From the IMG/VR virus record IMGVR_UViG_3300031957_002643, positions 271,553-335,552 of that record: 64,000 nucleotides of DNA; one strand, 5' to 3'. The notes below the pieces were generated by a model that ran no database searches, had not been told where the DNA came from, and saw only the letters and a list, made by a program, of their open reading frames with translations. The translations under genes and the position numbers were made by a program. Below, piece after piece: positions 3-45,800 of the stretch; within the stretch, counting starts at the first letter, position 1; each line of letters begins with the position of its first letter.

Positions 3-827
3 GGTTCTGCTGCTGTTGGCACCGATGAGATTGAAGATTATAAGGTTACGCCTGCTAAGTTAGAAAAAGGCACGCAAGGTGATATTCTGGTCGCTACTGG
101 TGGTGATGGAACATTTACTAGATTGAATGCGGGTGATGATGGTGCCGTTCTTTCTATGCAATCTGGTGTTCCGGCTTGGACAGGTAATGTTCTTCCTTCT
201 GGTGTGATTATGGACTGGTGTGGACAATCCGCTCCTGATGGATGGGTAATGGCGAATGGTAGGGCTATTGGTAATGCATCGTCTGGTGCCTCTGGTAGAG
301 CAAATGATGATACTGAAGCCTTGTTCTTATTCTTGTGGGCAAACTTTGCCGATGCTCAACTTGCCGTTTCTGGTGGACGTGGTGCATCGGCTCAAGCAGA
401 CTTTGATGCGAATAAAACTATTGCATTGCCTGATCTGAGAGGCCGTATGACGGTTGGTAGAGACAGCATGGGTTCGAGTAGTGCTGGACGAATTACAACG
501 GCTACAGCGACCGCTGGTGGCAATATAATGGGTGCTACAGGTGGTGTGGAGCGTGTGACCTTGACGGAAGCACAGATGCCGACGCACAAACACTTTAGTG
601 CAGCGGATAATGGTTTGGAGACGGAATTGGGTGGTTCATACTCGTATGTTTCTGATACGGTACCTATCCACATTCGTGGTAGGGACGTGAGTGGATTGGA
701 TTACTACTTTTGGGGATATAACGCTATATTGGCTCCCACGGTCGGGCCAACCAGTGAAACCGGTGGTTCGCAACCGCATAGTAATATGGCACCATTCTTT
801 GTATTGAGTAAGATTATCAAGCTATGA
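3..827 (+). CDS. Tail fibre / tail collar domain protein (5'-partial)
   Basis: Frame is open from position 3. Contains collar motifs PSGVIMDWCG, LPDLRGRMTVG and HSNMAPFFVLSKIIKL. Confidence 0.85.
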   Translation, partial: GSAAVGTDEIEDYKVTPAKLEKGTQGDILVATGGDGTFTRLNAGDDGAVLSMQSGVPAWTGNVLPSGVIMDWCGQSAPDGWVMANGRAIGNASSGASGRANDDTEALFLFLWANFADAQLAVSGGRGASAQADFDANKTIALPDLRGRMTVGRDSMGSSSAGRITTATATAGGNIMGATGGVERVTLTEAQMPTHKHFSAADNGLETELGGSYSYVSDTVPIHIRGRDVSGLDYYFWGYNAILAPTVGPTSETGGSQPHSNMAPFFVLSKIIKL

Positions 828-1672
828 CATTTCTGATTGGATTATTTGAAAATGATTTCGATGTTAGTAAATCGTATACTCCGTCACGATCCAAGTTCTG
901 GTATAATCCGAAACTGAACGATGTAATTTTTTTCTCTAATCAAAAACATCATACAGAAGTTGCCATTGACCAATTTGATTTGGAGATGGAATTGAATGCT
1001 ATTGAAGGTGATGCTGATGATGATATCATCAATGAGATGATCGATAATGGTTGGGTCAGAGGACATTTCATAGAGAATGATCATATTGAAACCCATTTGA
1101 ACCTGAACGGTAAACTTCGTGATGTTAGAAGAACACTAAAATGGGCGCTTTCTACTTTTGGTGAATTTGAATATCTGGTTATGGATGTCACAGACGATCC
1201 CTCTGTACCGACATATATCACCAGTGACCAATTTGATTTGTTTGTTCGGAAAGGTATCAGAAAGCGTTTAGGTGAAAGTCAAGATTATGGTGAAATTTAC
1301 AAGTCGTGGTACAATACCGCAACTGGTGAGTATTTCGTTATTGATAACGCTTTTGACTATCATCATTCTCAATGGATGATCGATCATGGATATTACGAGG
1401 GTAATATTGATGTACCATTGGATAGTGATGTGGTCGATAGAGCAGTTCTTGAAGGATGGGTTCGGATCAGACTAGACCATAGTCATATGCTCGATGCCTA
1501 CAAATTGAACATTCATGCTTTCAATTACGAGAATGCCAAATTAGGATACAGGGCGTTGAAGAAACATGCTCGTGGTGTCAAAATCAGTGGCGTGAATATA
1601 GAAACTGCACAGCACTATGAGTCATTCAATTACGAAGCTGACTTCATCAGATTTATTAATCGCGTGACGTGA
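824..1672 (+). CDS. Hypothetical protein with two copies of a WYN..HH..GWVR domain
   Basis: 282-aa ORF overlapping the upstream stop (ATGA); internal repeat visible; N-terminal LFE motif. Confidence 0.8.
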   Translation: MTFLIGLFENDFDVSKSYTPSRSKFWYNPKLNDVIFFSNQKHHTEVAIDQFDLEMELNAIEGDADDDIINEMIDNGWVRGHFIENDHIETHLNLNGKLRDVRRTLKWALSTFGEFEYLVMDVTDDPSVPTYITSDQFDLFVRKGIRKRLGESQDYGEIYKSWYNTATGEYFVIDNAFDYHHSQWMIDHGYYEGNIDVPLDSDVVDRAVLEGWVRIRLDHSHMLDAYKLNIHAFNYENAKLGYRALKKHARGVKISGVNIETAQHYESFNYEADFIRFINRVT

Positions 1673-5018: not shown

Positions 5019-5026
5019 CAATCAGC

Positions 5027-6945: not shown

Positions 6946-7079
6946 GACGAATGTGTTTGCGACTAGGGGGTGTTGAGACCAATGCTTCTACCAATTCAGC
7001 CACACCCAACAATGTGTTGAGTGACAGGATTCGAACCTGCACTTCTCGGTTTTGATAACCCTATGTCTCCGACTCGTCC
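6945..7079 (-). ncRNA. Second YrlA-like Y RNA with circularly permuted tRNA module
   Basis: GGACGAGU/AUUCGUCC terminal stem, GGGUUAUC, T arm GCAGGUUCGAAUCCUGU, closed acceptor CACUCAAC..GUUGGGUG and D arm UGGCUGAAUUGGUAGAAGC. Confidence 0.85.
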
Positions 7080-23829: not shown

Positions 23830-24629
23830 TGTTCTGGATTGTTCAAGAAGATTTGTACAATGAGTACAAGTATGACGAATTCCTCAATGCTCTTGATCGT
23901 ATGAATATCGATCACGTATTGGTGAAGCCGATTCCATTTACAAACACGCTCGTGAACGAAGATGAAATCCATATCGATGATTCTCAGCCGATTATTGTTT
24001 CGGGTTCTGTCTCATTAGTTCGTGTCGCCAGACGCCGTGGTTGGTTGCCGGGAAGTTTCCATGACCACGATTTCTTTTTTCAAGAGTGGCGAGATGGATT
24101 TGGAAAAGACAATTGTCTAAACGGGCATGCCAAAATCGTAAAGCTCAAAGATGCGACATTCAATGGTCATGATATCTTTGTTCGACCGATTTTGGATAAC
24201 AAGTCCTTTTCTGGTGTAGTCATGAATCGAGAAGAATTTATGTCGTGGCAATCGCATTATGCGTATGTCGAAAGAACGGATGAATTTCAAACACTACATC
24301 AAGATACCGAAATCATGATGTGTCGGCCTAAGAACATCATGGCTGAATATCGATTTTTTGTCGCAGATGGAAAAGTTGTCACTGGCAGTCTTTATGTTCG
24401 TGGTCGTCGCGTTGTCTATGAAGAATGCCATGAAGAAGATGTTATCGAGTTCACGCAATCAATGGTAGATAAATTTCAACCAGCTAAAGCGTTTGTGTTG
24501 GACGTTGCAAGAATCGATGGTGGATTCAAAATTATCGAAGTGAACAATTTCAATTCTGCGGGCTTTTATGCATGTGATGTCGTCAAGATAATTAATGCAG
24601 TAGAAGAAATGACTGAATTTTATTCTTGA
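23829..24629 (+). CDS. ATP-grasp domain protein (DUF4343/R2K-like)
   Basis: IFVRP....KSFSG, EYRFFV.DGKVVTGSLY, AFVLDVA and KIIEVNNFNSAGFY. Confidence 0.85.
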   Translation: MFWIVQEDLYNEYKYDEFLNALDRMNIDHVLVKPIPFTNTLVNEDEIHIDDSQPIIVSGSVSLVRVARRRGWLPGSFHDHDFFFQEWRDGFGKDNCLNGHAKIVKLKDATFNGHDIFVRPILDNKSFSGVVMNREEFMSWQSHYAYVERTDEFQTLHQDTEIMMCRPKNIMAEYRFFVADGKVVTGSLYVRGRRVVYEECHEEDVIEFTQSMVDKFQPAKAFVLDVARIDGGFKIIEVNNFNSAGFYACDVVKIINAVEEMTEFYS

Positions 24630-24654
24630 CGAGAATATAACTACCGTATATAAG
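24626..24654 (+). promoter_or_regulatory. Sigma70-type promoter
   Basis: TTGACG-N17-TATAAG. Confidence 0.75.
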
Positions 24655-24695
24655 AGTTTTCATCGGGATTGGCCCGCACGATTTGGAGAAATTAA

Positions 24696-24839
24696 ATGGC
24701 AAAGAAGACGAATGCATCGAATGCAAGCAATCGGCGTGATCCGGTGAAGAAGCGTACTTCCATCGGCAATTCTACTCGTTCGCGTCCGACGAACAAGCAT
24801 TCGACGTTCAAGCGTACTCGCGGGCAGGGTCGTCCGTAA
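24696..24839 (+). CDS. Small basic protein (47 aa) ending KRTRGQGRP
   Basis: Hand-translated MAKKTNASNASNRRDPVKKRTSIGNSTRSRPTNKHSTFKRTRGQGRP; GGAG SD; the C-terminal RGQG motif is recalled from T4-like phages. Confidence 0.75.
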   Translation: MAKKTNASNASNRRDPVKKRTSIGNSTRSRPTNKHSTFKRTRGQGRP

Positions 24840-24844
24840 GAGTT

Positions 24845-25225
24845 AAGGGAAACTAGGCGTCTGGCCAAGAGGACGTAGGGTCAATCCGCCCAAGCGAAGC
24901 GCGAGATACCCGATAAGCTCAGTGTAGACATGATTAGATCGCTGCAATGTTCGTGTCGTCGGTCTAGTGGAACTTTGCTGGTGGTAGGCGATAAAAAATC
25001 CTACCTGACAAGGATACAAGCAAAACGAACGTATATCGGTTTTGTCGTCGGTCAGGTACCATCAGTTAATACAGTTTGGTAGCAGAGCGCGGAATGGAAT
25101 GCCTTTCGCGGGGTAAGGGCAGCGGAGTAATTGACCGCCAGCTAAATCCCCTCAAGCACCGGGCGCGAAGGACGAGAACAGAGACTCGTTAAGTGACAGT
25201 TTAGCACCTGATCCTACCAATCCAA
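24845..25225 (+). ncRNA. Candidate structured RNA of about 380 nt
   Basis: No ORF. Stems CTGGTGGTA/TACCATCAG (24978/25057), CCTGAC/GTCAGG (25004/25051), CAAAAC/GTTTTG, GCGG/CCGC and ACGAG/CTCGT. Confidence 0.55.
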
Positions 25226-25233
25226 TTTTCTTC

Positions 25234-25262
25234 TTGACTTATATCACTGGTACGTATATAAG
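25234..25262 (+). promoter_or_regulatory. Tandem promoter P1
   Basis: TTGACT-N17-TATAAG. Confidence 0.8.
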
Positions 25263-25321
25263 TAAGAACACAGTCGGCAACAAAGATCGACAAGAAAACT
25301 GACAAATACTGAAAAAACTTC

Positions 25322-25350
25322 TTGACTTTTGTTTGTGTGTCCTATATAAA
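25322..25350 (+). promoter_or_regulatory. Tandem promoter P2
   Basis: TTGACT-N17-TATAAA with an A-tract upstream. Confidence 0.8.
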
Positions 25351-25355
25351 GGTTA

Positions 25356-25377
25356 CAACGAAAGTTGCTCTTTGACA
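25356..25377 (+). promoter_or_regulatory. rrn-type antitermination signal (boxB-like GNRA hairpin plus boxA)
   Basis: CAAC-GAAA-GTTG hairpin overlapping TGCTCTTTGACA, 11/12 identical to E. coli rrn boxA TGCTCTTTAACA. Confidence 0.7.
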
Positions 25378-25746
25378 TTGTTGGGAAATAAGTGAGACGA
25401 ACCGATCTTCACGGGTCCATCGGACCTTTGATTAGCATGTATCTCTATTGTTCTGCCTTAACAGACCTGTTCTTTACCGGGCAGAATGGTGCGAAGACGA
25501 GAGTAGAGACTCGATCCTTAGACTTGATGTGGAGTTTGCAAGCTGCCACGAGATAAGGACAAACTCTGATGGCCCCTTGAAGGTCGGTTCGTTGGCAAAG
25601 CGTTGATCCGGGCGTGTAGATGGTGTGGACACCATACCGGATAACCCTTTAATAATCGCCTGACTTAAATATCGGGCTAACCCAGAAAGAAAACACTCCT
25701 AAAGAAATAAGGCGTAGTGTTCCTTCCGAGGCGATTAACAAGTTTT

Positions 25747-25822
25747 GCGGGATGATGGTGTAATGGAAACACGGTCTACAGTAGTAGGACATCTAGTAAG
25801 GTTCAATTCCTTACCCCTCGCA
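25747..25822 (+). other. Degenerate tRNA-like module
   Basis: D arm GTGT-AATGGAA-ACAC and T arm GTAAGG-TTCAATT-CCTTAC; imperfect acceptor and anticodon arms; no CCA. Confidence 0.55.
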
Positions 25823-26525
25823 TTTGAGAATTTGCATCTGACCCTGTTTTGGCTTGGTGACCGATAGCGCTAAGACCACCGCGTGTGGAGAAAAGGCGTG
25901 TGTAGGAGCTTCGTCTGAAACTGTGGCGACACGGCACTTTAAAGCCGGTGATGTAATGTGGATGGGCGTTTTTGGAAGCCACGATCCACCGCGTTGCAAC
26001 TGAGAGCACATAAAGCCGACAGTACATCGGTAAAAGTGCAGCCCCAAAGGCCACGGGGAACCGAAAACATCTTCCGCAACGGTTTCTATAAGATGTGATC
26101 GGGCAGCGCGTTAAATCTTTATCTAGTTGATAGACTAATTGAAAGAGTGAAAGTACTTTCGAGAAAGTGGAACCTCTGCATCGATGAACTCATCTGAAAT
26201 ACCAATTGTAACAATCGCAAATGCTATAAAAACCGTGAGCAAGGAGAATGGCCTTGACAGGCAATTGGTAGGAAGGATGTTTAGTAGTCGATATATGCGA
26301 AGCGAAGTGTAGAAGGTATGGAAACTTTAGTAAGGGGAAGTCGCCCGGACAGCAGTTGCGATTTAAACCGGGAAATATTGGTTCGATTCCAATGAAACTA
26401 GGCCTCATTTGTGCGAATGCACACAACATAATCCGTGAGCAAGTGCTGGTTCGGGACGTGATACTAGTTAGTCACTGAACCTGTAAAATAAAGGCACCGA
26501 TCCTTTCGAGGTGGACGCCACGACC

Positions 26526-26600
26526 TGACCGGCTGGTGTATGATAGGAAACACGCCCCTATTAACGGGGAATACGGTAGATGCAAGTTCTGCCCGGTCCA
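26526..26600 (+). other. Degenerate tRNA-like module
   Basis: GACCGG/CCGGTC acceptor, GTGT/ACAC D stem, CCCC-TATTAAC-GGGG arm and non-canonical T loop TGCAAGT. Confidence 0.55.
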
Positions 26601-28479
26601 ATAAATTCCTCTATCATGAGGATATGTAATTGCAGTAACGCCGATTATGGTGATCGAACCTTACTGTAATAAATCCCGTTCATACCGGGTAAAAGGCCTA
26701 ACCAGCCAGTATGACCGCATCGTGACTAGTGTAAAGCCCACATCTGATTCGAACGGGTGTGTGGATAAAAGAAGCACGTCCCTCTTCGATAGGGCAAGTG
26801 TCGGTTGCAAGTCCGCCGCACGATGCAACAGGTTTTGGTGAGCAGTTGGTTTTGAAACCTTCGGAATGCCGACAGTCGTAGTAGCGCACGGCCACCACAT
26901 TTGTTCTACTTAGGACCGACAAAACGATTGATCCCCATAATCTTTCGTACAAAACGGTCGCCTACTGATGGAGTAGGAGAATTCGGATCATGAAGCCCAC
27001 GAAAAGGGTGGATTGTTTCGGAGTATAGCAATCCGGGGCTTGATCTCTCCGGGGAACAATAGACTGGTGTGGAAATGCAGATATCTCAGCAGGGGACATC
27101 AATGCGCCATGTAAAAGGATGCGCGCTCCTGACCAGTTGAGTTCCGAATTAAAACCATCGTTCGCCAGATGCATATGGCCAATCTTGGGAGAACACGTGC
27201 TGTGTCGCGGTGATTGCAGTAAATAATACGTGAGGTAAAAGTCCTAACAACGCCGCGTCGTTTCAAAGAATGCGGTTCCTAGCACATTTGTGGAGTGGAT
27301 AGGAGCAAAAGCCTGATGCCCATGACAAAGTTCTCTTTGCCCATCAGGAAATAGCATTTGGGGACTACCGGGAGAGTTCGGTGCTACATACGAGTCCAGA
27401 CCGTGATGGTATGTTTTCCGAGATAAGCAAAGAAAACATGAAGGCCTCCATCATGGAACAGCGTACAGATGTCCTTTTTGTCTAAATGGCAGGGTTGATG
27501 CTTATCGTCTAATGTCGTGGCCGATTAGGACCTGAAATCGTATGTATTCTCGTGACGATGATGTAACCGTTAAGACACATCTTCGTTTATTGCATGCACA
27601 ATGGTGGGAAGATCGGTTCTGTCAGACCGTGATTTGCCAGAGATGCTTGCTGCGAGAATGAAACTTGAAGTTCCTACATGCCCTGATGGCGAAGCCGGTA
27701 GGATTAAATTAGTTGGATGCGCTCAGCTTCAAGTTTCAAAGTTCCGCTAGTGCACATGCGGAAGCAAGTGTGTGAAGGTATCCGTCAAACGTAAAAGTTT
27801 TGGTCCCCTTCTGACCTGTATAAACTAAGACGCCAGAACACAACGTAACAGGAGTTGTTTTGGCCATGGGTTAGCTACCATGACTTTGAGCGTCACCACA
27901 CTTGCACAAGTTTTAGCTGCCACCATCGTATGGTTCGGACAGCCTATTGAATGAAATAGGAATAAGCAGTGATTGATCTGAAAGCCGTGATGATCAAATT
28001 AATAGAATCTGTGAACGAGTAAATGAAGCAAAAGTCATCAGGAGTGATCATTACTGGTGGTGAGTAGTGAAACTGAAAGGGAACAAGGAGATCAAGCAGG
28101 GAGCAGGTCCACAACCTTTAGGGCGTCCGTGGAATTAGAGGTTCGAGTCCTCTTTTGGTCTATATTCCGGTTGCCGGGAATGAAATACTCGCCCCTGTTG
28201 TAAAGGGAAATGAGATAGCTGATCGCTTGATGCCTTGGCGGGTGGATGGTGTGATGTACGTGGCATTAAAGTTTCAGGACGTTCTTTTGTCGTTCTCTCC
28301 CCGATTAAAACGAGAGAACGTCCTGCATCCATATCAGGGAAAGGAGATCATAACCGGGTCGGTACAAAGGAATGATCTCTGGTAGTGAGGATGGTAGTCC
28401 GATTAACCCCATGGACATTGCCCCCTGATCGTTATAACTCACTTATTTTCCAACAATGCATTCCTAGAGGAATAAACCA

Positions 28480-28884
28480 ATGGACATCTGGATCAAACAC
28501 GACCTTTCACATGCACGTATCAAAAAGACCGAATCTTGGAATTATGAACAGGATTGCGTTAATGGTATGTTGACGCCCGGTGATACTTTGTACGGTGTTC
28601 AACTTATTACATACGCATATGATTCATTTGGAAAATCAAAAGAGCCATCAAAAACATGGCTTTATTTGACTGGTGATCCTACCGATCTTCTTGACTTAAT
28701 CGATGAGATCGATGAATATCTGTCTTCTTATTCCGAAGATGAGTTGAACCAATCCCAATTCGAGTATATCAATCTTGAAACTAAAAAGTTCAAGTTTCGC
28801 GATTCGGATAGATATATTGGAGATTTCAAGGGATGGGGCACATCGTATGATTCTGTGAATATAAAGATTATCCCCGTTCTATAA
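28480..28884 (+). CDS. Hypothetical protein
   Basis: 134 aa; GAGGA SD. Confidence 0.7.
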   Translation: MDIWIKHDLSHARIKKTESWNYEQDCVNGMLTPGDTLYGVQLITYAYDSFGKSKEPSKTWLYLTGDPTDLLDLIDEIDEYLSSYSEDELNQSQFEYINLETKKFKFRDSDRYIGDFKGWGTSYDSVNIKIIPVL

Positions 28885-29010
28885 GAGACCCCTGATCACA
28901 CATCCTTGGCTCTGGTGATTTGGGTGTAACACCAAGGACAGCCCCCTTCGAGGGCTGTATGCAATCATATAATATTGACCGTATCAAGATTGGCCAACCA
29001 GTTAGATGCA

Positions 29011-29040
29011 GAAAAGGGCCGGGTTATCCCAGCCCTTTTC
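29011..29040. terminator. Bidirectional terminator
   Basis: GAAAAGGGC/GCCCTTTTC between convergent genes. Confidence 0.7.
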
Positions 29041-29041
29041 A

Positions 29042-29521
29042 TTATTGTACAAATTCGGAATTATAAGATGTGACAGTTTGCTTACCGTACTGATTGATTG
29101 ATCTGTCATCATAGCAATCGATGACCTGCTTAACTCGGTTTCTGGCATCGCCGTTATGTGTATCATCATACAATTTGAATTTAATACCCATGGCGGATTT
29201 CAATTCCAATGCACCGGTTGTTAACTCGTCGATACTTTTAGTGACTTCCACTCTTCCAGAGTCAATATATTTCGATGCAGACATTGATGCGTTCAAATCA
29301 TGAAGCGTCTTGAGGGCATCATCAGAAGTTTCTAGAATTGCAGTGATCGTGTTATCAAATTGTTCATTGTGAGCACGAAGATGGTCTTCCCATTCATTAT
29401 TTCTTTGTTTGAGATTTTCGATGGATTCGTTGATTTTGATTTCTTCAGCAGACAATTCTGGTTCTGGTTTGGAGAACCATCCGGTGACTGCATTCCATAA
29501 ATGAGACAATGGATTTTTCAT
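29042..29521 (-). CDS. Hypothetical coiled-coil protein
   Basis: Start MKNPL after AAGGA. Confidence 0.7.
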   Translation of the reverse strand: MKNPLSHLWNAVTGWFSKPEPELSAEEIKINESIENLKQRNNEWEDHLRAHNEQFDNTITAILETSDDALKTLHDLNASMSASKYIDSGRVEVTKSIDELTTGALELKSAMGIKFKLYDDTHNGDARNRVKQVIDCYDDRSINQYGKQTVTSYNSEFVQ

Positions 29522-33829: not shown

Positions 33830-36800
33830 ATGCATCGTATTGATAGTGAAGGAAACGTCAATAATAGGTTCAGTGAAGGCAATCCGTCTCTTGGTATTGA
33901 AGGTACTAAGGTAACTGCTGATTGGCTCAATGATGTTCAAGAAAATATTGCGTATACCATTGAAGCTGCTGGTTTAACTCTGGAAAAGGGCAACAGTGCC
34001 CTTTTGGCTAATGCTATTCTTACACTGGTCGGTGAAGGTGGTTCGTTCTCCAATCTGACTACCAGAATTAGAGAACTGAATGATTTCTATCTTTATGGTG
34101 CCCGTAATGTGTTCCGTCAGGATGATGAACCTGATGAAGCAACTCAAGGTCCATTCTTCGATAATGACATTTGGATTGAAACCGATCAAAATCCAGAAAA
34201 GGTATGGCTCTGGAATTCACTAACTGAGACATGGGTTGATACGACAGAAGAAGCAGCAGCCCGTGGCATTCTTGCAAAACAAAAACAACAAGCAATTGCT
34301 GATGGTCTAGTACAAATTTTCATTCAAACCGATACGCCTTCAGGCGCATCCGAAGGTGACATCTGGTACAATAAACGAGATGATCTTCTCTTCGTTTATG
34401 AGAATAATATTTGGAACCGCGTATACGACGAGGTTGCCAAACGAAACATTGTTGAATCTGTCATCAACTTTGCTGTCGATAGTGCACAAGGAACAGCAGA
34501 TTCGAAAATTCTAACCTACTATCAAGATGATGCACCAACTGGCTTGACGGCATTGAATGATGGTGACATTTGGTTTGATACGGATAATAACAACAAGCCG
34601 CATCGATATACTCATCCTAATTGGGTTGAAGTTCGTGATGGGCGCATTGAAGACGCAATCGATTACGTCATTCTACAGGGTGCCATCGCAGATGGCACTA
34701 TTTTCGTTTACTTCTCTGAAGATGAACCTGATGCAATCAATCAGGCAGCATTAACACCACCAAATCCTGCACCATCTGAAGGTGATGTCTGGATCGATAT
34801 CACAGATGAAGGTGGCTCTCCTCGCAATGATCCCTATCTCTTTAGTAGTGGGTCTTGGGTATTACAGAATGATCCAGAGTTCCGATCATTATTGCTCAGT
34901 TTTGCAACAGCCAGATCAATTCAGGATGGTGCGGTAACAATTTATTTCAGTCCGACCGAACCAGATGATACCTATATTCCGCCACCGCGTTATGGTGATA
35001 TTTGGTTTGATACTGATGATGTGACCATTGATGATCCTGATGCTGCAAATCCTTCTACTGATCCTCAGATCACAGTTCCAAAATGGGAGCAGTATCGTTA
35101 TGACGGTACAAATTGGGTTCTCATTGAAGATTTCAAACTGAAAATTGTCGAAGCCAATTTGAAAATTGAAGAATTGGCAAGAGCTAGTGCTGATACTGCA
35201 TTGTCCGGCCAGATCACAACGGCAACCACTCGTATTGGTGAAAATGAAGCGACCATTCAGCAATCTCTATTATCGATTAATGGTATTGCCGGTGCATATG
35301 GGGTTCGAACCAATGTCAATAATGAAATTGTTGGTTTCGGTTTCCTCACTGATTATGAAAGAGAAATTGAATTCACCAAAACTGGATCGTTAGATTTCAA
35401 TCCGGGTGATGAAGTTTTTATTGGTGCTGATTGGGCAACAAAAACGTATTCCGCAGTCATCGTCACGGTAGACAATGTGAATGGCACCATGCGTGTCATC
35501 TCGGAAAGTGGAACGTTTGCTACTGGTGTAACAATCACGTCTCGATTGCGCTTGGACGCTAATGCTACTATCGACGCAGGAACCGTAAATCCGACACCGG
35601 GCACGTCAGAATTTGAAATCATCGTTGACAAATTCAAAGTCACCGATGGAACCACTTCTTCGACTCCATTCACTATTAGTGGGGGCGTTGTTTATGTCGG
35701 TGCTCTCGATACAAGCACCCCACAGGTTCAATTCATTGGTGATTTTGCTAATGAGCCAGATACCACATATGCAATCAATAGCATTTATAAGAACACGACA
35801 AACGGTAACACCTATATTCTTGAATATATTTCTGGTTCAAGTGGTCCAAAACAATGGGTGATCTTCCTAGAGAGAGGTGCTAACGCTAGAACGCTTGTTC
35901 TTTCATCCGACTCTCCGGGCTATCTATTTGACTCTAATGCTGTAAGCACGCCATCAAACGCAAGCATCACATTCCGGGTTCAATATCAGGGCCAGTCGAG
36001 TGCAATTGGTTCTGGTGACATTACTGTTTATGATAAAGATGATGTCGCTTTAAGTCCTACGCTCTCAAATACAAATTCAGTAGATAGTACAGTCAATGAC
36101 TCTGGCGGAACAACGCATTCCGGTTATTATGAATTTGATCTTGCATACTCTGAATTCAGTAGTTCCGATTTTCCTCTTACCGTTGAAGTGGACGATGGAA
36201 CTCTTACTGACACATTAGGTATTGTTCGTATCGTTGGTTCAACAGCAAAAACACTATCTATTAATCCAGACTCATTTGTGTTCTTGTTCGAAGATGACGT
36301 TGCAACCGATCCACAAAACTCATCGATCCATTTCCGCATTCAACACCAGAGCTTATCAACAGCACCAACAACTTCTGAGTTGACCATTGAAGATGCTGAT
36401 AGCACCACGTATTCATCAACAAACTTCACATCTGCTGGATCAGGATCAGGCGTAACTAGCTTTGAGCTTCTATGGTCCACAGTATCAGCAGCAACGTTCC
36501 CAATCACGGTTACTGTTACGGATGAGGGAATCACTGATGTTGTTGTTATCCGTCAGCTTATTGGTGGACTAGATGCTATTTCGGGCTTCCTGACAAATGA
36601 ATCACATTTGGTTCCAGCGGACGAATTAGGCAATATCGAATCTGGTGGATTGGATGGTGCAATTGGTACATTCGATGTGTATCAGGGCATCAGTAAAAAG
36701 AATACCGATGTCACTTATAGCGTAGCGTCATCAACCGGCTGTACCGCAACAATTTCAGATGCAGCAGATGGAACTGCTGGTGATTATTCAATCACTGCGA

Positions 36801-39800
36801 TGAGTGCCAATAAGGCAACCGCTGTTTTCCAAGCAGTCATCGATTCAGTTACCATCACAAAAACGATGAGTTTGACCAAATCTTTAGCAGGGGTTTCTGC
36901 TAAAGGTATTGCTCTATTTGCCACTGCACAAACGTTTGAGTTTGATGGCGATGATCAACCAAAAGATGCCGGTGCCAGTATCACATTGACCACAGTGCGA
37001 ACAGGGCTTTCGGGCATCACGTGGTCTGCTGTTGATGAAAATGATGATCCGGTTTCTCTTTCGGGAACCGGTGATGACACTCGAACGTTATCTATTGGTA
37101 ACTTCGGATCATCTCAATACGTCACTGTGACCGTTACTAAAGTTGATGGTGGTGACACTTATACGGATAAAATTCGTGTCGTGCGATTGGTCGAAGGTAG
37201 TAGCTCTGTCCAAGTAGTTCTGTCCAACGAAGCACATACTTTCTTCGCAGACGAAAATGGTGACATCTCTTCTGGTGATTTTGATTCTGGCAATTGCACA
37301 ATTTCAGTATATCGCGGAACTGCACAAATTTCATACAATGCATCTCCAACAAACAACACGTTTAGATTCGGAACAATCACTGCTTCGGCAGGTGTCACAC
37401 AAGATGGAACTGAAGTTGCACCAGAAGTAGGCATTTCTGCAATGACCAACTTGTTTGGTTATCTGGATGTTCCGGTCATTTATCGCGACAATGCTGGAAC
37501 AGATACGACTTATACCCGTAGAATTTCATATGTGAAATCGAGAGAAGGCGAAAAAAGTAGATCACTTCAACTTTACGGCAGTGATCAAGTATTCAGATTT
37601 GATGGCGATGATGATCCAATCGATGCGGGCCAAACTATCACGGTTACCGCGTTCAAGCAAAATCTTGGAACTCTAACGTTTGCTGCTGAAGATGATAGTG
37701 CAGTAGATGTTACCGCAGATTTGACCGGATCGGGCGACAGTAGAACCCTATCAATTACTGACTTTGGTGATGCTGAATTCGTTCGGGTGACTGCTTCTGC
37801 GGATTACACCGTCAACGGAAGCACCGAAACCGTAACAGATACTTTCACGATTTATAGAATTCGTGGTGCAAAAGCAGCGGTGTCTGTAATTCTTACCAAC
37901 GAATCTCATACCTTCTTTGCAGGACCAGATGGAAATATTGACAATGCATTGTTTGATGCAGGCAATTGTACTATTCGTGTTTTCCGTGGAGCAGAAGAAA
38001 TTTCTTACAATGGAACTCCAACCAATAATACATTCCGTTTCGGAACAATTGTCGCTTCTTCTGGTTTAACTCTTGACGGAACGGAAATAGCCCCAACTGT
38101 TGGTCTCACTGCTATGGAAGAAGATAGTGGAACTTTGACGGTTCCGGTTATCTATCGCGATCCAAACGGAAATGATGAGACCTATAATCGTGTGATTTCA
38201 TATTCGAAGGCAAAGGTTGGTGCACAGGCCCGTGGTCTGAGTATGAATGCCACTTCTCAAGTATTCAGATTTGATGGCGAAGGCGTAGCCATCAATGGTG
38301 CTGACACGATCACCTTTACAACACTCAGAACACTCTTGGGAACAGCACCTACGTGGGCGGCTATTGATGATCAAGGCGGCAATATCGCCCTTACCACGGT
38401 TGACGATGACACACGTAGATTGACGATTACCAACTTCGGAACGTCCCAATGGGTCCGCGTATCAGCCGAAGTCACGACGAGCATTGATGGTAACCCTGTC
38501 ACCTATAGAGATTACATTACCGTTGTTAGATTGCAGCGTGGACAGGATGCAATTACTGCTATTATCGAAAATGAAACACACGTCTTCCCTGCTGATGAGG
38601 ATGGTGTTGTTTCTGATTATTCTACAGGCGATACGCTTGTTCGGGTATTTCTTGGCGATACCGAAGTTTCATATGGTGTCAACAATGAACAATTCCGTTT
38701 TGGTACGATTACGCCAACAAATGTTCAGGATGCAGAGCTAACCCCGCCTGAAGTTGGTATTTCGAATATGACGGCTGATACTGGTCGTTTGAGATTACCA
38801 ATCATCTATAAAGATGCATCTGGTAATGATACGACTGTATACAAAGAAATCACTTATACTAAATCTCGTGCGGGGGTTGCAGCTAGAAATCTAAGATTGT
38901 TCCCATCTGCATTCGTTTTCGAATTTGATTCTGATGACAATGCCATCAACAATTCTGACGAAATCACCTTCACTGCCATTGCCACGAATGTTACTGGACT
39001 TTCATTTAGTGCAGTTGATCAAACCGACACACCAGTTAATCTCTCTGTGGTTTCAAATGTTGCGACATTGGCGATTACGGATTTCGATGATGCGGAAAAT
39101 GTAACAGTAACAGTAACCGGTACTTCAACAGTCAACGGAAGCACTGTTAATTTTAGTGATAGTGCTACGATTGTGAGATTGCGAGAAGGCGGTGGTGGTG
39201 CCAGTGTCGTTCTCACGAATGAGTCTCACACTTTCTATGCTGATGAGGAAAATGAAGTTCTACCTTCTGAGTATGCTGGTGGTAATTCGGTTATCAAGGT
39301 CTACGTTGGAACTTCAGAAATCAGTTATAATGCAACTCCAACGAACGGAACATGGCGTTTGGGGAGTATAACGGAAACCAATGTCACTAGGAACGGTGGA
39401 TTGAGTCTTCCGACTATTGGTATTTCCGATTTCGAAAAGGCATCGAACACAGGATCACTTGCGATCAATGTCATTTATCGTGACAATAATGGCAATGACA
39501 GAACGATCCCACGCCTGTTGACATATTCCAAATCAAAAGCTGGTACCGATGCTAGATCACTTAGGTTGATCGCAACTTCCCAGCTATTCAACTTCGACAC
39601 AGCCGGACAGCCAATCGACAGTGGTGATGAAATCACATTCAATGCCGTTCGTCAGTTCATTGATGGATCAGCGGTTTGGTCTGCTGTTGATGATCAGGGT
39701 GGAAACCCTTCTCTTACTCCGGGTGCGAACGGTGATGAGAAAGTATTAACTATTGGTGATTTTGGTACGGCTGAAAGTGTCGTTGTTTCCGTATCAGCAA

Positions 39801-42800
39801 CGGATAGTTACACAGGTGAAACTCTCTCGGATCAAATCACGATCTATAGACTCAACCAAGGTGCTGAAGGTCGAGATGGTATAACTGTAATTGTATCGAA
39901 TGAGACACACACCTTTATTGCAGACGAAGCAGGATTGGTAGACGATTATAGTACCGGAAATACCACTATCAGTGTTTATAATGCATCAACACAGGTGAAC
40001 TATTCAGCAACGAAAGTTGATAACTCCTTCCGTTTTGGAACTATTGTCGCAAACAATGTAACCAGAAACAATCTATTGAGTGAGCCAATTCTTGGTATCT
40101 CTACGATGTCTGATGAATTTGGAAGCTTGACGGTTCCAGTAATTTACACCAATGCTCAAGGCGAAGACACCACTTTCACAAAGGTGATTTCTTACACCAG
40201 AGCAAGAGCAGGTGTAAACGTTAGAAACATCAGATTACGAGCAGATTCATTAACATTTGAATTCGATCAGTTTGGTGATCCTATCGACAGTAATCAGGTC
40301 ATCACATTTACATCATTGGGAACAAATCTGCCTGATCCTACATGGACAATCACTAGTGATGGAAGTGCGGTCTTTACGTCCTCGCCGGATGCTGACACCA
40401 GAACAATTGATATCGATGATTTTGGAACATCTACAGAAGCAACCGTTAAAGTTTCAGCGACATACAATAGCGTTGACTATGAGGATGAGATCAGAGTCAT
40501 TCGACTTGAAAGAGCGAGAGACTCAGTATCAGTCGTTGGTTCTAATGAAAACCATACGTTCTTTGCAGATGAAGGTGGAACTATCCTTCCGGGCGATTTC
40601 GCAGGTGGTAATTGTACCTTCTATGTATATCATGGTTTAAGCCAGATTTCATATAATGCAACGCCAACCAATAATACATGGCGTTTTGGCACAGTTGTCG
40701 AGAATAATGTCACACAGACAGTTGTTGGTGGTGGAACCATTGGGGTTACTGCAATGTCTGCGGACAGCGGAAGCTTAACGGTTCCGATTATCTATCGTGA
40801 CAAAGATGGTGTAGATCAAACCTTTACGAGAATTATTTCTTATACCAAGGCTCGCAATGGTCGTGATGCTAGATGGGTGAGATTGGCAGCATCCGAACAA
40901 GTCATGCGCTTCAATAGCGATGACATTCCTGTTGATGCTGGTCAAACGATTGATATTACTGTAAGTTTGAACCTAGTTGACATCGGTGATGTCACTGTCA
41001 CGGCTGAAGACGAGTCTCAATCTGCAATTACTCTGGGCGGCACCGGAGCAAATAGAACACTTAGTATTTCTAACTTTGGTGCAAGTGAATATGTCGTAGT
41101 TGAAGCTGTCGCCAATATTACAGTTGAAGGACAAGCACAAGTCATCACTGACCAGATCACGATTGGTCGTGTTGCTGATGGTTCTGGTGTTGTGCAGGCA
41201 CTAGTAGAAAACGAAGCCCATACTTTTGCCGCTGATGAAGATGGTGTAGTTGACAGTTATGCTGGTGGCAACACAATCATTCGAGTATATCGTGGTTCCG
41301 AGGAAATTTCTTACAATGGAACCCCGACGAATAATACATTCCGTTTCGGAACAATTGTTGCATCTTCTGGGGTGACAAGAAATACTGGACTGTCCGCACC
41401 TAATGTCGGTGTGTCTGCAATGACTGAGAATTTCGGTACATTGACGGTTCCAGTCCTGTATCGTGATCCGAACGGCAATGAAGTCACCGTCAACAAGGTT
41501 ATTTCATATTCTAAATCTGTCGCCGGTAGAAACGCAAGATTGTTGCGTTTGTATGGATCAAGTCAGGTGTTCCGTTTCACATCTGATGATGTTCCTGACA
41601 ATCCTGCGGACGAAGTTACTCTAACTGCAATTTCAACAAACCTTGGCGTACCGACTTGGACCGCAGTAGATGAGAATGGAACCAATAGGGATTCAATCCT
41701 AACAGCAGGAGCAAATGCCTACGAAAAAGTCATTACGGTTTCCGATTTCGATCCATACGAAAGAATCGAGGTCACGGTATCTGCAACGTATAATGCGACC
41801 ACTTATACTGATCAGTTCACGATTTATAAAATTCGTGAAGGATCATCAAATATTGTTGTGGCTCTGACGAATGAAGCCCACATTTTTGGATCAGATGAAG
41901 CTGGTACGGTTGCAGATTATGGAAGCGGTAATTCTATCGTCAATGTTTTCCGTGGCGGGGATCAAATCAGTTACAATGCCGGTGGTGCTGATAACACGTT
42001 CTTGATCGATAATTTTGTGGTCAACAATTCCACGAGAAATACAGGATTAACGCTTCCGACTGTCGGCATCAGTGCCATGTCGGCAGACGAAGGATCGTTG
42101 ACCTTTGACGTGGTTTACACAAATGCCGCAGGTGTTGTTGAACCGGCAGTAACCAAGGTTATTTCATATTCAAAATCTCGTGCGGGTGTGAATGCTAGAA
42201 GTCTGAGACTATTATCTTCAGCACAGCAATTCAATTTCGATTCTGACAATGATCCCATCGATGCTGGTGCGACTATCACATTTGAGGCTGTCAAAACGTA
42301 TATTCCAGAAGCGGTAACTTTCGCGGCAGTCGATCAAGATAGTGGAAGTATTACGTTAACTGGATCAGGGAATACCCGTTCTCTATCGGTAACCAATTTT
42401 GGCGCATCCACGTATGTTGATGTTACTGTATCCGTAACGAGTGATGTCGTTGGTTCATCTACAGATTTTGAAGACACCATACGAATTGTTCGCATTAAAG
42501 ATGGTAACACCGGTATAGATGGTAAAGATTCGCTATCCATATTCGCGACAAATCCAACGACCACATTCGCCCTTGATCAGAATGGTAGCATGGTTGAAGC
42601 GTATTCTGTTGGTGACACCACCTTTGAAGTGTATCTCGGGACAACCGCTGTTTCATATTCAGGAACAACTACCGCAAATACATGGCGATTTGGAACAATA
42701 TCTGGCACGAATGTTGATGTTTATCAGAGCGGTGCGACTGTTGGTATTAGAGACATGTATGCCAATCAGGCGTCTATCGCAGTTCAGGTCATTTATAGAA

Positions 42801-45800
42801 ATTCAGATGCACAAGACATTATCACAAACAGAACAATAAGTTATGCCAAAGCACGTTCTGGTGTCGCTGAAAAAGAATGGTATTTGTCCTTCGACAAACA
42901 GACCTTTGCGTTTGATGGTGACAATAATGCCAAGAACGGTTCTGATACCATAACGGCAACGTTGACTCGTTCTAGTGGTCTCTCATCACCAGTATGGACA
43001 ACTGATCCGTCCATCACTCTATCAAATGGAGTGAATGAAGATCAGAAGATCATCACAATTAGTAATTTTGGTACGAATGATACCGTCAATGTAAAGGCTA
43101 GATCAACTCTTGGAACGCCGGTATATTCTACTGATTATAATTACGATTTCTACTCAGATAAGAACGGATGGACATCAGCAGGCGCAGTAACTAATGTTAT
43201 CGATGAGGGCTGGGACATCACAATTGATGATGCTGTGAATTCTAATCAGAACATTTATAAAGATTTTCCTGCTGCAAATTATTTCGATGGTGCGAATTAT
43301 AGATATGCGGTGGTTGATATTGAAATTACGTCTGCTACTGGTGATCAACAAAAACGTCTATACTGGAAGACTTCTGGTCACAGTTATTCCAATTCTTATT
43401 ATGCGGAAGCGAATGTTCAGGATGCAACCCTGACTACACCGGGAAGATACATTCTTATTTTTGATCTTCACAATCCTACTGTTGGTGGATCGGACTTTAG
43501 TGATAATGAAATTCAAGGCCTGCGATTTGACGCATTTGGTGCTGCTGATGCGACCTTTACTATTCATGGGATTTCTCTTGCAACTGATGTCGTCTATTAC
43601 GAAGACAATTTCACTATTTCAAGAATCATAGATGGATCAACGACAATTCAAGTTGTTGCGTCAAACGAATCTCATACATTCAAAGCTAACGAAGAAGGAA
43701 CACTTACCGGAAGCATTTCTGACGGTAACTGTGAGTTCAGTGTTTATCGCGGTTCCGAATTAATCACTTACAGCGCAACGCCAACAAATAATAGATGGCG
43801 GTTTGGAACAATTTCAGTAACAAGCGGAACGGCTACAGTAACCAATTCGACATCAACGATCACGCCAACCGCGTTGAGCACTGATAGCGCAACTGTTGAC
43901 GTTCAAATCATCTATCGTGATCCGAATGGTGATGACACCACCATTACCAGAACGTTGTCTTACGCAAAGGCGCGTCAAGGTATTCTGGCGAGAACTCTGA
44001 AGGTAACCGCATCATCTCTTGTTTTGGAATATGACCAGAATGGATCATTGAAGACACCGGGCGATTACATTGATTTCACCATTGATGGTTTGAATTTGTC
44101 TTCACCATGGACTGTATCGTGTACTGATCAGGATAGCTCAAATCTCACACTGTCACAACAGTCAGCGAATGTGTATCGTTTGACCGGTGCCAATTTTGGT
44201 TCAGCCACAAGAGCTACCTTCACTGCATCCAAGTCAGTAACGATTGATGGAACTCCACAAACGTTTACGGACAGTGTTACTGTTGGTAGAATTCAAGATG
44301 CTGTTTCAAATATTCAAGTCATTCCGACAAATGAATCTCACACCTTCTTTGCCAATGAAGATGGTTATGTTGCAGATTACACTGGTGGATTGAGCACATT
44401 CATTGTGTATCGTGGTCTAGAGCTTATCAATTTCAACTCATCTCCAACAAACAATACTTGGAGATATGGAACGATCACACCAACTGGAATTAGTCATACC
44501 GTTGATGGTGATGAAATTTCTGTTTCAGCTATGACTGCAAACGAAGCTTCTGTTTCGGTTCAAGTCATTTATCGTGATCCGAATGGACAGGACTTCACCT
44601 TCACACAGCAGTTGTCATACGCAAAGGCAATTCAAGGATTTATTGGTGCTGGTGGTGTTTCTATTTTCCAAACCAATCCGACCACCACATTTACGACCGA
44701 TCAGGCTGGCGTTCTTCTCAGTGGATCATATGATGACGGCAATTCTACCTTCTCAGCATATGCAGGTGACGAGGAACTATCGTATAGTACGTTCCCGAAG
44801 GTAAACACGTTCCGTATCACTAATGTGTCTGGAACGAATGTAACCGTAGACAATGGGGAATCGCTTCCGACTGTTGGTATTACTGGTATGTCTTCGGATA
44901 CTGGTAAAATTGAAACAACAATTATTGCATATCCAGCAACCACTAGGGTTTATAACTTCGGATTTGAGAAAGGCTCTCCAAGCACACAAACGCCTAATGG
45001 TCCAACAGGATGGTTGTTCTCAGGCTCAACGGGCAATGTCGGATATATTGCAACCGTTGATCCGAATTCTAATTTCAATTCCACCATTTCTTGGGGCGCG
45101 GTTGATAATAACGATCCGTTTGGAAGTGCCGGTTGGTATCAAGTTGGTAAGAGATTTGGTCTGGTTGATAGTGCAACCTTTATCAAAATTAGTGCCAAAA
45201 TCCGTTCATATAATTTGAATGTTCCCCCAACACTTTCTGTAAACTCAAACGAAAGCTATTTCACAGAATCAGACGTATTTGTCGAGGCAGTATTCAAAGA
45301 TGAAGACAATGTTCAAATCGGCACAACCTATTACTCTAAGACACTTTCACATAAGTTGTATGATGAAGGGCGTGCTGGTGAGGCATTAGGCGGTCAGTGG
45401 TTGATGTTCACAGATACCGTGCCCGTTCCTGCTGGTACTGAAATTATTGAAATCTATCTGGTATCATCAGACGGAAGTAATACTGTCCAGACAAAAGGCT
45501 ACAAAGGCGCAAATGCTGGTAACCTTTATGATGATGTTATTTTTGAATCTGATGCTGGTATCTACGATATCACTCGTGAAATCCCAATCGTTCAGACTAC
45601 AGCATACTCACGCGCAAAAACTGGTGAGAATTCAGTACTTTATTACATCAAGCCAACAAACGGAACAGCAATCAAGAATGGTTCTGGAACGCTCACTGGT
45701 GAACTTAGAAAGGTTGATGGTCCATCTGATACAAAAGTGACATCAGGAGCAATCCGTTTGTATCAGGATGGAGTATTGATTACTTCTCCTACGAATTATG

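What the first reader, a model, noticed from the sequence alone, without database searches (positions are those of the whole stretch)
25234..25377. rRNA-operon-like leader: tandem P1/P2 promoters plus boxB/boxA antiterminator ahead of the ORF-free region
Seen: two TTGACT-N17-TATAA(G/A) promoters 88 nt apart, then a GAAA-tetraloop hairpin and TGCTCTTTGACA. Known: rrn leaders have P1/P2 and boxB-boxA (TGCTCTTTAACA), which recruit NusB/S10/NusG/SuhB so that long untranslated RNA escapes Rho and folds co-transcriptionally. Inference: the phage co-opts host rRNA antitermination to make a long non-coding transcript. This supports the giant ncRNA call independently of folding.
Basis: partly seen in the sequence, partly recalled or inferred. 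Interest (0 to 1): 0.85.

Follow-up and report, generated by a model that had tools for sequence, protein, structure and literature searches.

The report
Phage copy of host rRNA-operon leader
A 335-kb marine phage begins a 3-kb protein-free RNA gene with two of its own promoters and an exact copy of the boxA signal that alphaproteobacteria place ahead of their ribosomal RNA, then closes the RNA with an rRNA-style end-to-end helix. The same signal heads tRNA and GOLLD RNA operons in other phages.

Summary
TTGACT-N17-TATAA(G/A) occurs at 25234 and 25322. Both belong to a ten-member, plus-strand-only promoter class of this phage (0.48 expected by chance). TGCTCTTTGACA (25366-25377) extends to an 18-mer that is identical to the rrn leader boxA of Alphaproteobacteria. 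That 18-mer gave at least 120 genome hits, and it lies 154-360 nt upstream of 16S wherever enough downstream sequence was available. The GAAA hairpin is no better than chance and is not conserved.

New here: boxA runs straight into the 5' strand of a 21-bp leader-trailer helix (25376-25396 with 28438-28458; 0 of 200 shuffles reach its score). The helix encloses about 3.04 kb that has stop codons in all six frames. Bacterial 16S leaders have the same layout.

A relative (L002) keeps the 18-mer exactly. Another (L032) keeps the promoter and the helix, with compensatory changes, but its boxA is degenerate. In seven other viral contigs the 18-mer sits just after a promoter. In six it heads tRNA arrays, two of which contain GOLLD RNA.

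The best reading is host Nus-factor antitermination and RNA chaperoning, borrowed for long untranslated phage transcripts. No RNA data were available, so the transcription start and the function itself are inferred. This is a new variant of a known kind. Interest 0.72.

The parts
24626..24654 (+). Promoter of the same class (TTGACG-N17-TATAAG) ahead of the small ORF. It is a possible third, upstream start for the unit.
24696..24839 (+). Small basic ORF (47 aa). It precedes the promoter-boxA-RNA module in the window, L002 and L032.
   Evidence: No Pfam family.
25234..25262 (+). P1: TTGACT-N17-TATAAG, preceded by an A/T-rich tract.
   Evidence: (repeat D2)
25322..25350 (+). P2: TTGACT-N17-TATAAA, preceded by GAAAAAACTTC. 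It is positionally conserved in L002 and L032.
25356..25367 (+). It is not significant and not conserved.
25366..25383 (+). BoxA (core 25366-25377) plus TTGTTG. The 18-mer is identical to the alphaproteobacterial rrn leader.
25376..25396 (+). Leader strand of the 21-bp leader-trailer helix.
   Evidence: (I1)
25397..25592 (+). First local domain, closed by a 20-28-bp helix (25397-25424 with 25565-25592).
   Evidence: I2; z = -3.6 for 25350-25649
25747..25822 (+). tRNA-like module with acceptor, D and T arms but no canonical anticodon arm. It is conserved in L032.
25826..26070 (+). Conserved structured domain A, shared with L032 and L002.
   Evidence: alifold z = -5.9; 24 compensated pairs against 9.6 +/- 2.8
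26110..26410 (+). Conserved domain B, ending in a T arm (26380). It is shared with L032, and its core motif is also in L157.
26411..28437 (+). Remaining about 2 kb of the enclosed RNA, with no detectable homolog. It contains a 66-nt element (27662-27727) shared with L002 and a T-arm or terminator-like hairpin at 28137-28153.
28438..28458 (+). Trailer strand of the leader-trailer helix. It ends 22 nt before the next ORF.
28480..28884 (+). Downstream ORF (134 aa) with no promoter motif of its own. It is probably co-transcribed through the RNA.

Best explanation
This is a working phage imitation of the host's 16S rRNA leader.

Shown from sequence and comparison:
- Two tandem copies of the phage's standard sigma-70-type promoter are present.
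- The alphaproteobacterial rrn boxA starts 16 nt after the end of the P2 -10 hexamer, so about 9 nt after the expected transcription start.
- The 5' strand of a 21-bp helix starts inside the last bases of boxA. Its partner lies 3,041 nt downstream, at the very end of the non-coding stretch.

Inferred from established knowledge of rrn antitermination complexes:
- Host RNA polymerase starts at P1 or P2.
- The nascent boxA is bound by host NusB-S10, and NusA, NusG and SuhB join.
- The modified polymerase resists Rho and pauses less across about 3.1 kb of untranslated RNA.
- Because boxA stays tethered to the polymerase, the adjacent leader strand is held near the RNA exit until the trailer strand emerges. 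This closes the helix and loops out the RNA.
- The closed helix is then a likely RNase III substrate. It would release a 3-kb RNA, or a precursor that is cut further at its tRNA-like modules, from the mRNA of the downstream ORF.

The enclosed RNA is a new, partly conserved structured RNA of unknown function. The same boxA leader serves tRNA, GOLLD and intron-bearing operons in other phages of alphaproteobacteria. It therefore looks like a general phage device for long untranslated transcription units.
For: Promoters:
- P1 and P2 belong to a ten-member, + strand-only motif class that sits in front of genes and tRNAs.

BoxA:
- It is a single exact match in the window.
- The 18-mer gave at least 120 stretches in bacterial genomes. 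72 of the 80 listed rows are named Alphaproteobacteria.
- 16S was found 133-290 nt downstream in 6 of the 6 alphaproteobacterial loci where a 16S was found (L077, also alphaproteobacterial, had none).
- The 16S 5' motif lies 154-360 nt downstream in 52 of 69 loci with enough sequence. A further 51 loci end at a contig edge.

Leader-trailer helix:
- Bacterial 16S leader-trailer helices begin 19-24 nt after the boxA start.
- The window helix begins at +10 and scores 42 against 22.9 +/- 2.4 in shuffles, 0 of 200 reaching it.
- The helix is part of the global minimum-energy fold.
- L032 has the helix at the homologous place, with changed but still complementary sequence.

Conservation:
- L002 was found through the R2K protein at 69% identity. 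It keeps the 18-mer exactly, inside otherwise unalignable non-coding DNA.
- Of 11 other viral contigs with the 18-mer, 7 have TTGAC(A/T)-N17-TAnnnn just upstream.
- 6 of those 7 lead into tRNA arrays on the same strand. These arrays include GOLLD RNA in L013 and L005, and a group I intron in a tRNA in L010.
- Negative control: the L032-type 16-mer gave 35 viral hits, none with a promoter and none with tRNAs.

Selectivity:
- Only the long unit has boxA. The short tRNA units of the same window use the same promoters without it.

Enclosed RNA:
- It is non-coding.
- It is real DNA: two independently assembled contigs show 0 differences.
- It is structured where it can be compared.

Mechanistic model:
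- PMC10250234, PMC4807359, PMC3177189.
Against: - No transcript data were available. No RNA run was listed, so the transcription start, read-through and processing are all inferred.
- In the third homologous locus (L032) the boxA has two mismatches to the consensus, including the position that is critical in E. coli. That variant is not recurrent elsewhere. The RNA can therefore apparently exist without a canonical boxA.
- The RNA strand is G-rich (GC skew +0.08 to +0.13). This makes it a poor Rho loading substrate, so protection from Rho may not be the main benefit.
- Local folding energies of the ORF-free region are no lower than those of the coding flanks.
- L002 shows no leader-trailer helix.
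- The tRNA-array phages show no leader-trailer helix either.
- The viral and bacterial loci with the 18-mer were selected by that 18-mer. Their identity at those positions is therefore by construction, and only their context counts as evidence.
Confidence: 0.75

Rival explanations
1. The leader is functional, but what follows is not one giant RNA. It is a polycistronic precursor, a degenerate descendant of a tRNA array. That precursor is cut at its tRNA-like modules into several small stable RNAs. On this reading, boxA mainly serves to carry polymerase through to the downstream protein gene at 28480.
For: - In six other phages the same leader heads tRNA arrays.
- Three T-loop motifs and one cloverleaf-like module lie inside the RNA.
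- Only about 700 nt (25727-26404) is conserved with L032, and the spacing between conserved blocks differs by 1.2 kb.
- The L032 helix even encloses a 92-aa ORF.
- ORF 28480 has no promoter of its own.
Against: - A 21-bp helix joins the two extremes of the region in the window. Its counterpart in L032 argues for one folded unit, at least as a precursor.
- No canonical tRNA is detectable in the region, even at lax thresholds.
Confidence: 0.35
2. The boxA match is a functionless relic: a scrap of host rrn leader picked up by recombination, or a chance match.
For: - L032 has lost the consensus.
- Four of the 13 viral hits (L004, L006, L012, L014) and several non-alphaproteobacterial genome hits look like chance.
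Against: - Only the 18 nt are shared with bacteria, and the flanks are phage-specific.
- The motif is kept identical between the window and L002, while the surrounding non-coding DNA has diverged beyond alignment.
- It recurs in the same orientation, 7-30 nt behind promoters, in seven further contigs with unrelated flanks.
- The control motif shows none of this.
Confidence: 0.05
3. It is a lambda-type nut site that needs a phage-encoded factor. One candidate is the small arginine- and lysine-rich 47-aa protein encoded just upstream. That factor would bind a hairpin next to boxA, instead of the site working through the host rrn pathway alone.
For: - The small basic ORF travels with the promoter-boxA-RNA module in all three relatives.
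- L002 has a strong 16-bp hairpin between its promoter and boxA.
Against: - The hairpin is not conserved, and in the window it is no better than chance.
- The element order is hairpin then boxA, which is rrn-like and not lambda-like.
- Relatives of the small protein sit in structural gene modules of other marine phages, without any such RNA nearby.
- The boxA is identical to the host's own rrn site, which needs no phage factor.
Confidence: 0.07
4. The 18-mer acts at the DNA level. It could be a binding site for a host or phage DNA-binding protein, or a patch of homology for recombination with host rrn operons.
For: Identity to a multi-copy host sequence could in principle serve recombination.
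Against: - 18 bp is too short for efficient homologous recombination.
- The strict orientation and the position just downstream of promoters, co-directional with the RNA genes that follow, fit a signal read in the transcript.
Confidence: 0.03

Closest known systems
Bacterial rrn operon leader (promoters P1/P2, boxB-boxA-boxC, 16S leader-trailer helix; the rrn antitermination complex of NusA, NusB, NusE/S10, NusG and SuhB)
   Same: - Tandem strong promoters with A/T-rich upstream tracts.
- BoxA identical over 18 nt to the alphaproteobacterial rrn leader.
- BoxA followed directly by the 5' strand of a helix of at least 20 bp that closes a multi-kb untranslated RNA.
- tRNA-like elements inside the unit.
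   Different: - It is encoded by a phage.
- The enclosed RNA is not rRNA (no Rfam SSU or LSU match).
- BoxA lies only about 9 nt from the predicted start.
- The helix starts inside boxA (+10), whereas bacteria start it at +19 to +24.
- There is no significant boxB and no recognisable boxC sequence.
- The promoters are the phage's general type.
Lambda nutL/nutR sites (N-dependent antitermination)
   Same: A phage uses a boxA RNA and host Nus factors to make polymerase termination-resistant.
   Different: - Lambda has boxA followed by a conserved boxB hairpin that binds the N protein, and a weaker boxA (CGCTCTTA).
- Here the boxA is the full host rrn version.
- The hairpin is upstream, weak and not conserved.
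- No N homolog is evident.
- The transcript protected here is non-coding.
BoxA outside rrn in bacteria (suhB and other Nus-factor targets; Baniulyte et al. 2017, PMC5725501)
   Same: It shows that a consensus boxA alone, placed in a 5' leader, recruits the Nus complex outside rRNA operons.
   Different: Those are short mRNA leaders in gammaproteobacterial chromosomes with the consensus GYTCTTTAANA. The present one has G at position 8, the alphaproteobacterial form, and precedes a 3-kb non-coding RNA in a phage.
GOLLD and ROOL RNAs (large ornate phage and prophage RNAs near tRNA islands; PMC12286853)
   Same: - Large phage-encoded non-coding RNA in a tRNA-type neighbourhood, with embedded tRNA or tRNA-like units.
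- In L013 and L005 a bona fide GOLLD RNA lies in an operon headed by the very same 18-mer.
   Different: - The window RNA does not match the GOLLD or ROOL models, even at lax thresholds.
- It is about four times longer.
- It is closed by a leader-trailer helix.

Membership tests
rrn-type boxA antitermination leader | BoxA sequence matching the host rrn consensus | tested here: met
   - 25366-25383 is identical to the 18-mer found upstream of 16S in Alphaproteobacteria.
- It matches 10 of 11 positions of the gammaproteobacterial consensus GYTCTTTAANA.
rrn-type boxA antitermination leader | BoxA lies in the transcript, downstream of the start site | tested here: inconclusive
   The P2 -10 hexamer ends at 25350, 16 nt before boxA. 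Ten promoters of this class sit in front of genes. No RNA run was listed, so the start is not mapped.
rrn-type boxA antitermination leader | BoxB hairpin upstream of boxA | tested here: not met
   The hairpin folds at -3.3 kcal/mol with z = -0.18 and is not conserved among relatives. From my own knowledge, not tested here: boxB is dispensable in E. coli rrn operons.
rrn-type boxA antitermination leader | Leader-trailer helix whose 5' strand follows boxA and which encloses the RNA | tested here: met
   - 25376-25396 pairs with 28438-28458: 21 bp with one G-U pair, and 0 of 200 shuffles reach its score.
- It is present in the global MFE.
- L032 has a counterpart.
- Bacterial leaders have the same layout.
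rrn-type boxA antitermination leader | Followed by a long untranslated transcription unit | tested here: met
   - Stops occur in all six frames over 24840-28480.
- In other phages the 18-mer precedes 2-4 kb tRNA arrays.
rrn-type boxA antitermination leader | Binding of NusB-S10 and resistance to Rho | not testable with these tools
   This needs biochemistry or a reporter assay.
rrn-type boxA antitermination leader | Conservation in homologous loci | tested here: inconclusive
   The boxA is exact in L002. In L032 it is degenerate, with two mismatches, although the promoter and helix are kept.
Lambda-type nut site | BoxA followed by a conserved boxB hairpin that binds an N-like protein | tested here: not met
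   There is no conserved hairpin downstream of boxA. The sequence after boxA is the long-range helix strand.
Ribosomal RNA | Match to the SSU, LSU or 5S covariance models | tested here: not met
   nothing in 24400-28480, even at E up to 5.
GOLLD RNA (RF02032) | Match to the Rfam model | tested here: not met
   There is no match in the window. The model does find GOLLD in L013 and L005.
tRNA gene array | Canonical tRNA genes detected by ARAGORN or the Rfam tRNA model | tested here: not met
   None was found in 25378-28438 at default settings. Only a relaxed ARAGORN call at 25747-25822 and isolated T-loop motifs were found.

The most novel reading that the evidence does not exclude
The phage encodes an rRNA-sized (about 3.08 kb) structured RNA of a new class, and makes it the way a cell makes rRNA. 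Steps: strong tandem promoters, host rrn antitermination and chaperone complex recruited by a perfect boxA, co-transcriptional closure of a leader-trailer helix, then RNase III release. The RNA might also form a particle with the small basic protein encoded just upstream. This would make it the largest known phage non-coding RNA. It would also be the first sign that the rrn transcription machinery is a general production line for giant viral RNAs, GOLLD included.
Probability: 0.3. Interest if true: 0.9.

Novelty: new variant of a known kind. Interest (0 to 1): 0.72.

Why it matters
BoxA-dependent antitermination is textbook for rRNA operons and for lambda. An exact host rrn boxA at the head of phage non-coding operons was not found in the literature I could search.

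If it works as proposed, four things follow.

1. It explains how phages can transcribe multi-kilobase untranslated units (tRNA islands, GOLLD and this 3-kb RNA) in hosts where Rho normally stops such transcripts.
2. It gives a sequence-only clue to host class. The boxA version is clade-specific, and here it points to Alphaproteobacteria.
3. It offers a simple flag for finding new large phage RNAs: promoter, then host boxA, then an ORF-free stretch.
4. It supplies independent, non-thermodynamic support that 25378-28438 is a deliberately made RNA.

Tried and rejected
- **Recoded gene.** Rejected: TAA, TAG and TGA all occur in every frame.
- **Known RNA family.** Rejected: Rfam gave nothing at gathering score, at E up to 5 over 5.4 kb, or at E up to 10 over 1 kb with lax filters.
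- **Hidden tRNA or tmRNA genes.** Relaxed ARAGORN gave one pseudo-tRNA and implausible calls with kilobase introns, and no tmRNA.
- **Thermodynamic signal.** The first script timed out. The repeat showed that local z-scores inside the region (mean -1.05) are no better than in the coding flanks (mean -1.43). Folding energy alone does not support the RNA.
- **Close relatives among cultured phages.** None was found by DNA. Protein matches were distant only.
- **Small ORF as an anchor for more loci.** Its relatives sit in structural modules without the RNA.
- **Metagenome scan with the R2K protein.** It returned only the L002 contig again. R2K relatives at 45% identity lack the module.
- **Motif scans for more members of the RNA family.** They found only the known contigs plus L157.
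- **L032 variant as an alternative functional boxA.** Rejected by the viral scan: 0 of 35 hits have a promoter or tRNAs.
- **Leader-trailer helices in the tRNA-array phages and L002.** Not significant.
- **TTGACA inside boxA as a -35 element of a further promoter.** Rejected: there is no TATA-type hexamer 16-18 nt downstream.
- **RNA-level evidence.** No RNA run was listed. The two DNA runs only confirm the assembly.

Full report
**What is there**

The window comes from IMG/VR contig 3300031957_002643, 335.5 kb, from seawater. It carries rIIA and rIIB, an R2K ATP-grasp gene, a 4,535-aa ORF and ten tRNAs, so it is a jumbo phage. It has no close DNA relative among cultured phages.

Between the R2K gene (ends 24629) and the ORF at 28480, all six frames are full of TAA, TAG and TGA. 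The one exception is a 47-aa basic ORF at 24696-24839. Two independently assembled contigs from two runs cover 24500-29100 with no difference, so the region is not an assembly artefact.

**Checking the observation**

P1 (25234-25262) and P2 (25322-25350) are exactly as described.

- They are not special to this locus. TTGAC-N18-TATA occurs ten times in the window, always on the + strand, against 0.48 expected.
- Each copy lies just ahead of a + strand gene or tRNA: tRNA-Ser, tRNA-Met, ORF 10370, rIIA, rIIB, the small ORF, P1, P2, tRNA-Pro and ORF 55007.
- The consensus is an A/T-rich tract, TTGAC(A/T/G), 17 nt, then TATAA(G/A/T).
- They are therefore very probably real promoters, of the phage's ordinary kind.

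TGCTCTTTGACA (25366-25377) is unique in the window.

The GAAA hairpin is real but trivial: -3.3 kcal/mol and z = -0.18. It starts at or before the expected P2 start, and nothing equivalent is conserved.

**The boxA is the host's**

The match extends to the 18-mer TGCTCTTTGACATTGTTG.

- 72 of the 80 listed rows are named Alphaproteobacteria from many orders, and many lie at contig ends.
- Rfam places 16S rRNA 133-290 nt downstream in Maricaulis, Sphingomonas, Tritonibacter, Nisaea, Arenibacterium and an alphaproteobacterial MAG.
- Over all 120 loci, 52 of the 69 with enough sequence have the 16S 5' end 154-360 nt downstream. A further 51 run off a contig end.
- The few hits in other phyla have no rRNA nearby and look like chance.

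The element is thus the alphaproteobacterial rrn leader boxA. It differs from the gammaproteobacterial consensus GYTCTTTAANA (PMC5725501) only by G at position 8. This also points to an alphaproteobacterial host. That fits the R2K gene's best cultured matches, which are mostly phages of Alphaproteobacteria such as Caulobacter, Brevundimonas and rhizobia.

**A leader-trailer helix**

The repeat search found that 25376-25407 is complementary to 28427-28458.

- The core is 21 bp with one G-U pair (25376-25396 with 28438-28458).
- It scores 42, against 22.9 +/- 2.4 in 200 dinucleotide shuffles, with a maximum of 31.
- It is part of the global minimum-energy fold of 25357-28475.
- Its 5' strand begins inside boxA, and its 3' strand ends 22 nt before the next ORF.
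- In five alphaproteobacterial rrn operons the 25-29-bp 16S leader-trailer helix likewise starts 19-24 nt after the boxA start.

The phage therefore copies the architecture as well as the motif.

In the current model of the rrn antitermination complex, boxA stays bound to the polymerase. The adjacent leader strand is held at the RNA exit until the trailer emerges (PMC10250234). A helix that spans 3,041 nt is exactly the case where that would help.

**Related loci**

- **L002** (R2K 69% identical) has, in this order: the small ORF, a TTGACT-N17-TATAGT promoter, a strong 16-bp hairpin, the identical 18-mer, about 1.5 kb without ORFs, and then R2K. Apart from the 18-mer and one 66-nt element, the non-coding DNA no longer aligns with the window. 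Retention of the 18-mer is therefore meaningful.
- **L032** (R2K 65%) has the small ORF, a TTGACA-N17-TATAAG promoter, and then a degenerate boxA: TTTGACA is kept, but the 5' half is changed and no consensus match exists within one mismatch. A leader-trailer helix sits at the homologous position (1340-1365 with 5024-5049). Its sequence differs from the window's but is still complementary (6 of 200 shuffles reach it).
- **Gene order.** The window has R2K, small ORF, RNA, ORF134. L002 has small ORF, RNA, R2K, ORF134-homolog. The small ORF and the RNA therefore move as one module.

**The same leader elsewhere**

The 18-mer occurs in 13 stretches of IMG/VR, which represent 11 contigs other than the window's and L002's.

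- In seven of them (L005, L007, L008, L010, L011, L013, L015) it lies 7-30 nt downstream of TTGAC(A/T)-N17-TAnnnn with an A/T-rich upstream tract.
- In six of those seven it leads into tRNA arrays on the same strand.
- Rfam finds GOLLD RNA inside the arrays of L013 and L005, about 1.25-1.85 kb downstream of boxA. It also finds a group I intron in the first tRNA of L010.
- As a control, the L032-type 16-mer gave 35 viral hits. None is behind a promoter and none is ahead of tRNAs.
- Inside the window, the short tRNA units use the same promoter class without boxA. BoxA therefore goes with length.

**What the enclosed RNA is**

It matches no Rfam family and has no canonical tRNA.

Three blocks are collinear between the window and L032.

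- **tRNA-like module (25747-25822).** Acceptor, D and T arms are kept, with two compensatory and several wobble changes.
- **Domain A (25826-26070).** It is also present in L002. The alifold energy is z = -5.9 against column shuffles, with 24 compensated pairs against 9.6 +/- 2.8.
- **Domain B (26110-26410).** It gives z = -3.5. Its core motif recurs next to a tRNA array in an unrelated AT-rich phage contig, L157.

Three T-loop motifs lie on the + strand inside the RNA.

The remaining 2 kb has no detectable homolog, and local folding energies are unremarkable. So a conserved structured core is shown. A single 3-kb functional fold is not shown.

**Mechanism and limits**

- **Shown:** promoter class, host-identical boxA, helix, non-coding content, partial conservation, and recurrence ahead of untranslated operons.
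- **Inferred:** the start site, Nus factor recruitment, Rho resistance and/or chaperoning, and RNase III processing.
- **Against a pure anti-Rho role:** the transcript is G-rich.
- **Against strict necessity:** L032 lacks a consensus boxA.
- **Untested:** no RNA run was listed.

**Verdict**

The same device serves tRNA and GOLLD operons in other phages.

Noticed in passing
L013:12005-12474 (-) and L005:1177-1643 (-): Bona fide GOLLD RNA (RF02032, 190 and 188 bits) lies inside tRNA arrays whose operon starts with a promoter and the same 18-mer boxA. It sits about 1.25-1.85 kb downstream of boxA and has a tRNA embedded in it.
   Followed up: partly
L010:9806-9999 (-): A group I intron (RF00028) sits in the first tRNA, directly after the promoter-boxA leader of a long tRNA array.
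   Followed up: no
window 3798, 7250, 10297, 18532, 20794, 24626, 25234, 25322, 51548, 54958 (+): Ten copies of TTGAC-N18-TATA occur, all on the + strand and all ahead of genes or tRNAs. This is the phage's promoter consensus, with a TATAAG -10 that lacks the usual final T.
   Followed up: yes
window 24696-24839 (+): A 47-aa basic ORF with its own promoter accompanies the RNA module in the window, L002 and L032. Its more distant relatives lie in structural modules of marine phages. It matches no Pfam family.
   Followed up: partly
window 27662-27727 and L002:8064-8135: A conserved element of about 66 nt (74% identity) lies inside the RNA in the window. In L002 it lies between tRNA-Met and the small-ORF promoter.
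   Followed up: no
L157:2668-2735: The domain B core motif (an AATCGCAAA strand, TATAAAAACCGTGAGCA, a hairpin, then TGACAGGCA) occurs in an unrelated AT-rich viral contig just upstream of a tRNA. That tRNA has an enlarged anticodon loop that is complementary to the motif's first strand.
   Followed up: partly
window 6870-6880 (-), 7027-7037 (-), 49712-49722 (+): Further T-loop motifs (GGTTCRANTCC) lie outside any called tRNA. They may be more tRNA-like elements.
   Followed up: no
window 25368-25371 with 28466-28469: In the global fold, CUCU of boxA pairs with AGAG in the Shine-Dalgarno region of ORF 28480, extending the leader-trailer helix. This may be coincidence, or it may link RNA processing to translation of the downstream ORF.
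   Followed up: no
L011, +18 to +860 from boxA: About 830 nt of unassigned non-coding sequence lies between boxA and the first tRNA. A possible closing helix (+11..26 with +830..845) is not significant on its own.
   Followed up: partly
L077, L083, L071, L087 (Novosphingobium, Rhizobiaceae): In some alphaproteobacterial genomes the 18-mer is not followed by 16S. These may be non-rRNA targets of the Nus complex, or prophage leaders.
   Followed up: no
L032:4124-4402: A 92-aa ORF with a good ribosome-binding site lies inside the region bracketed by the L032 leader-trailer helix.
   Followed up: no
window 33830-47437 (+): A single ORF of 4,535 aa.
   Followed up: no
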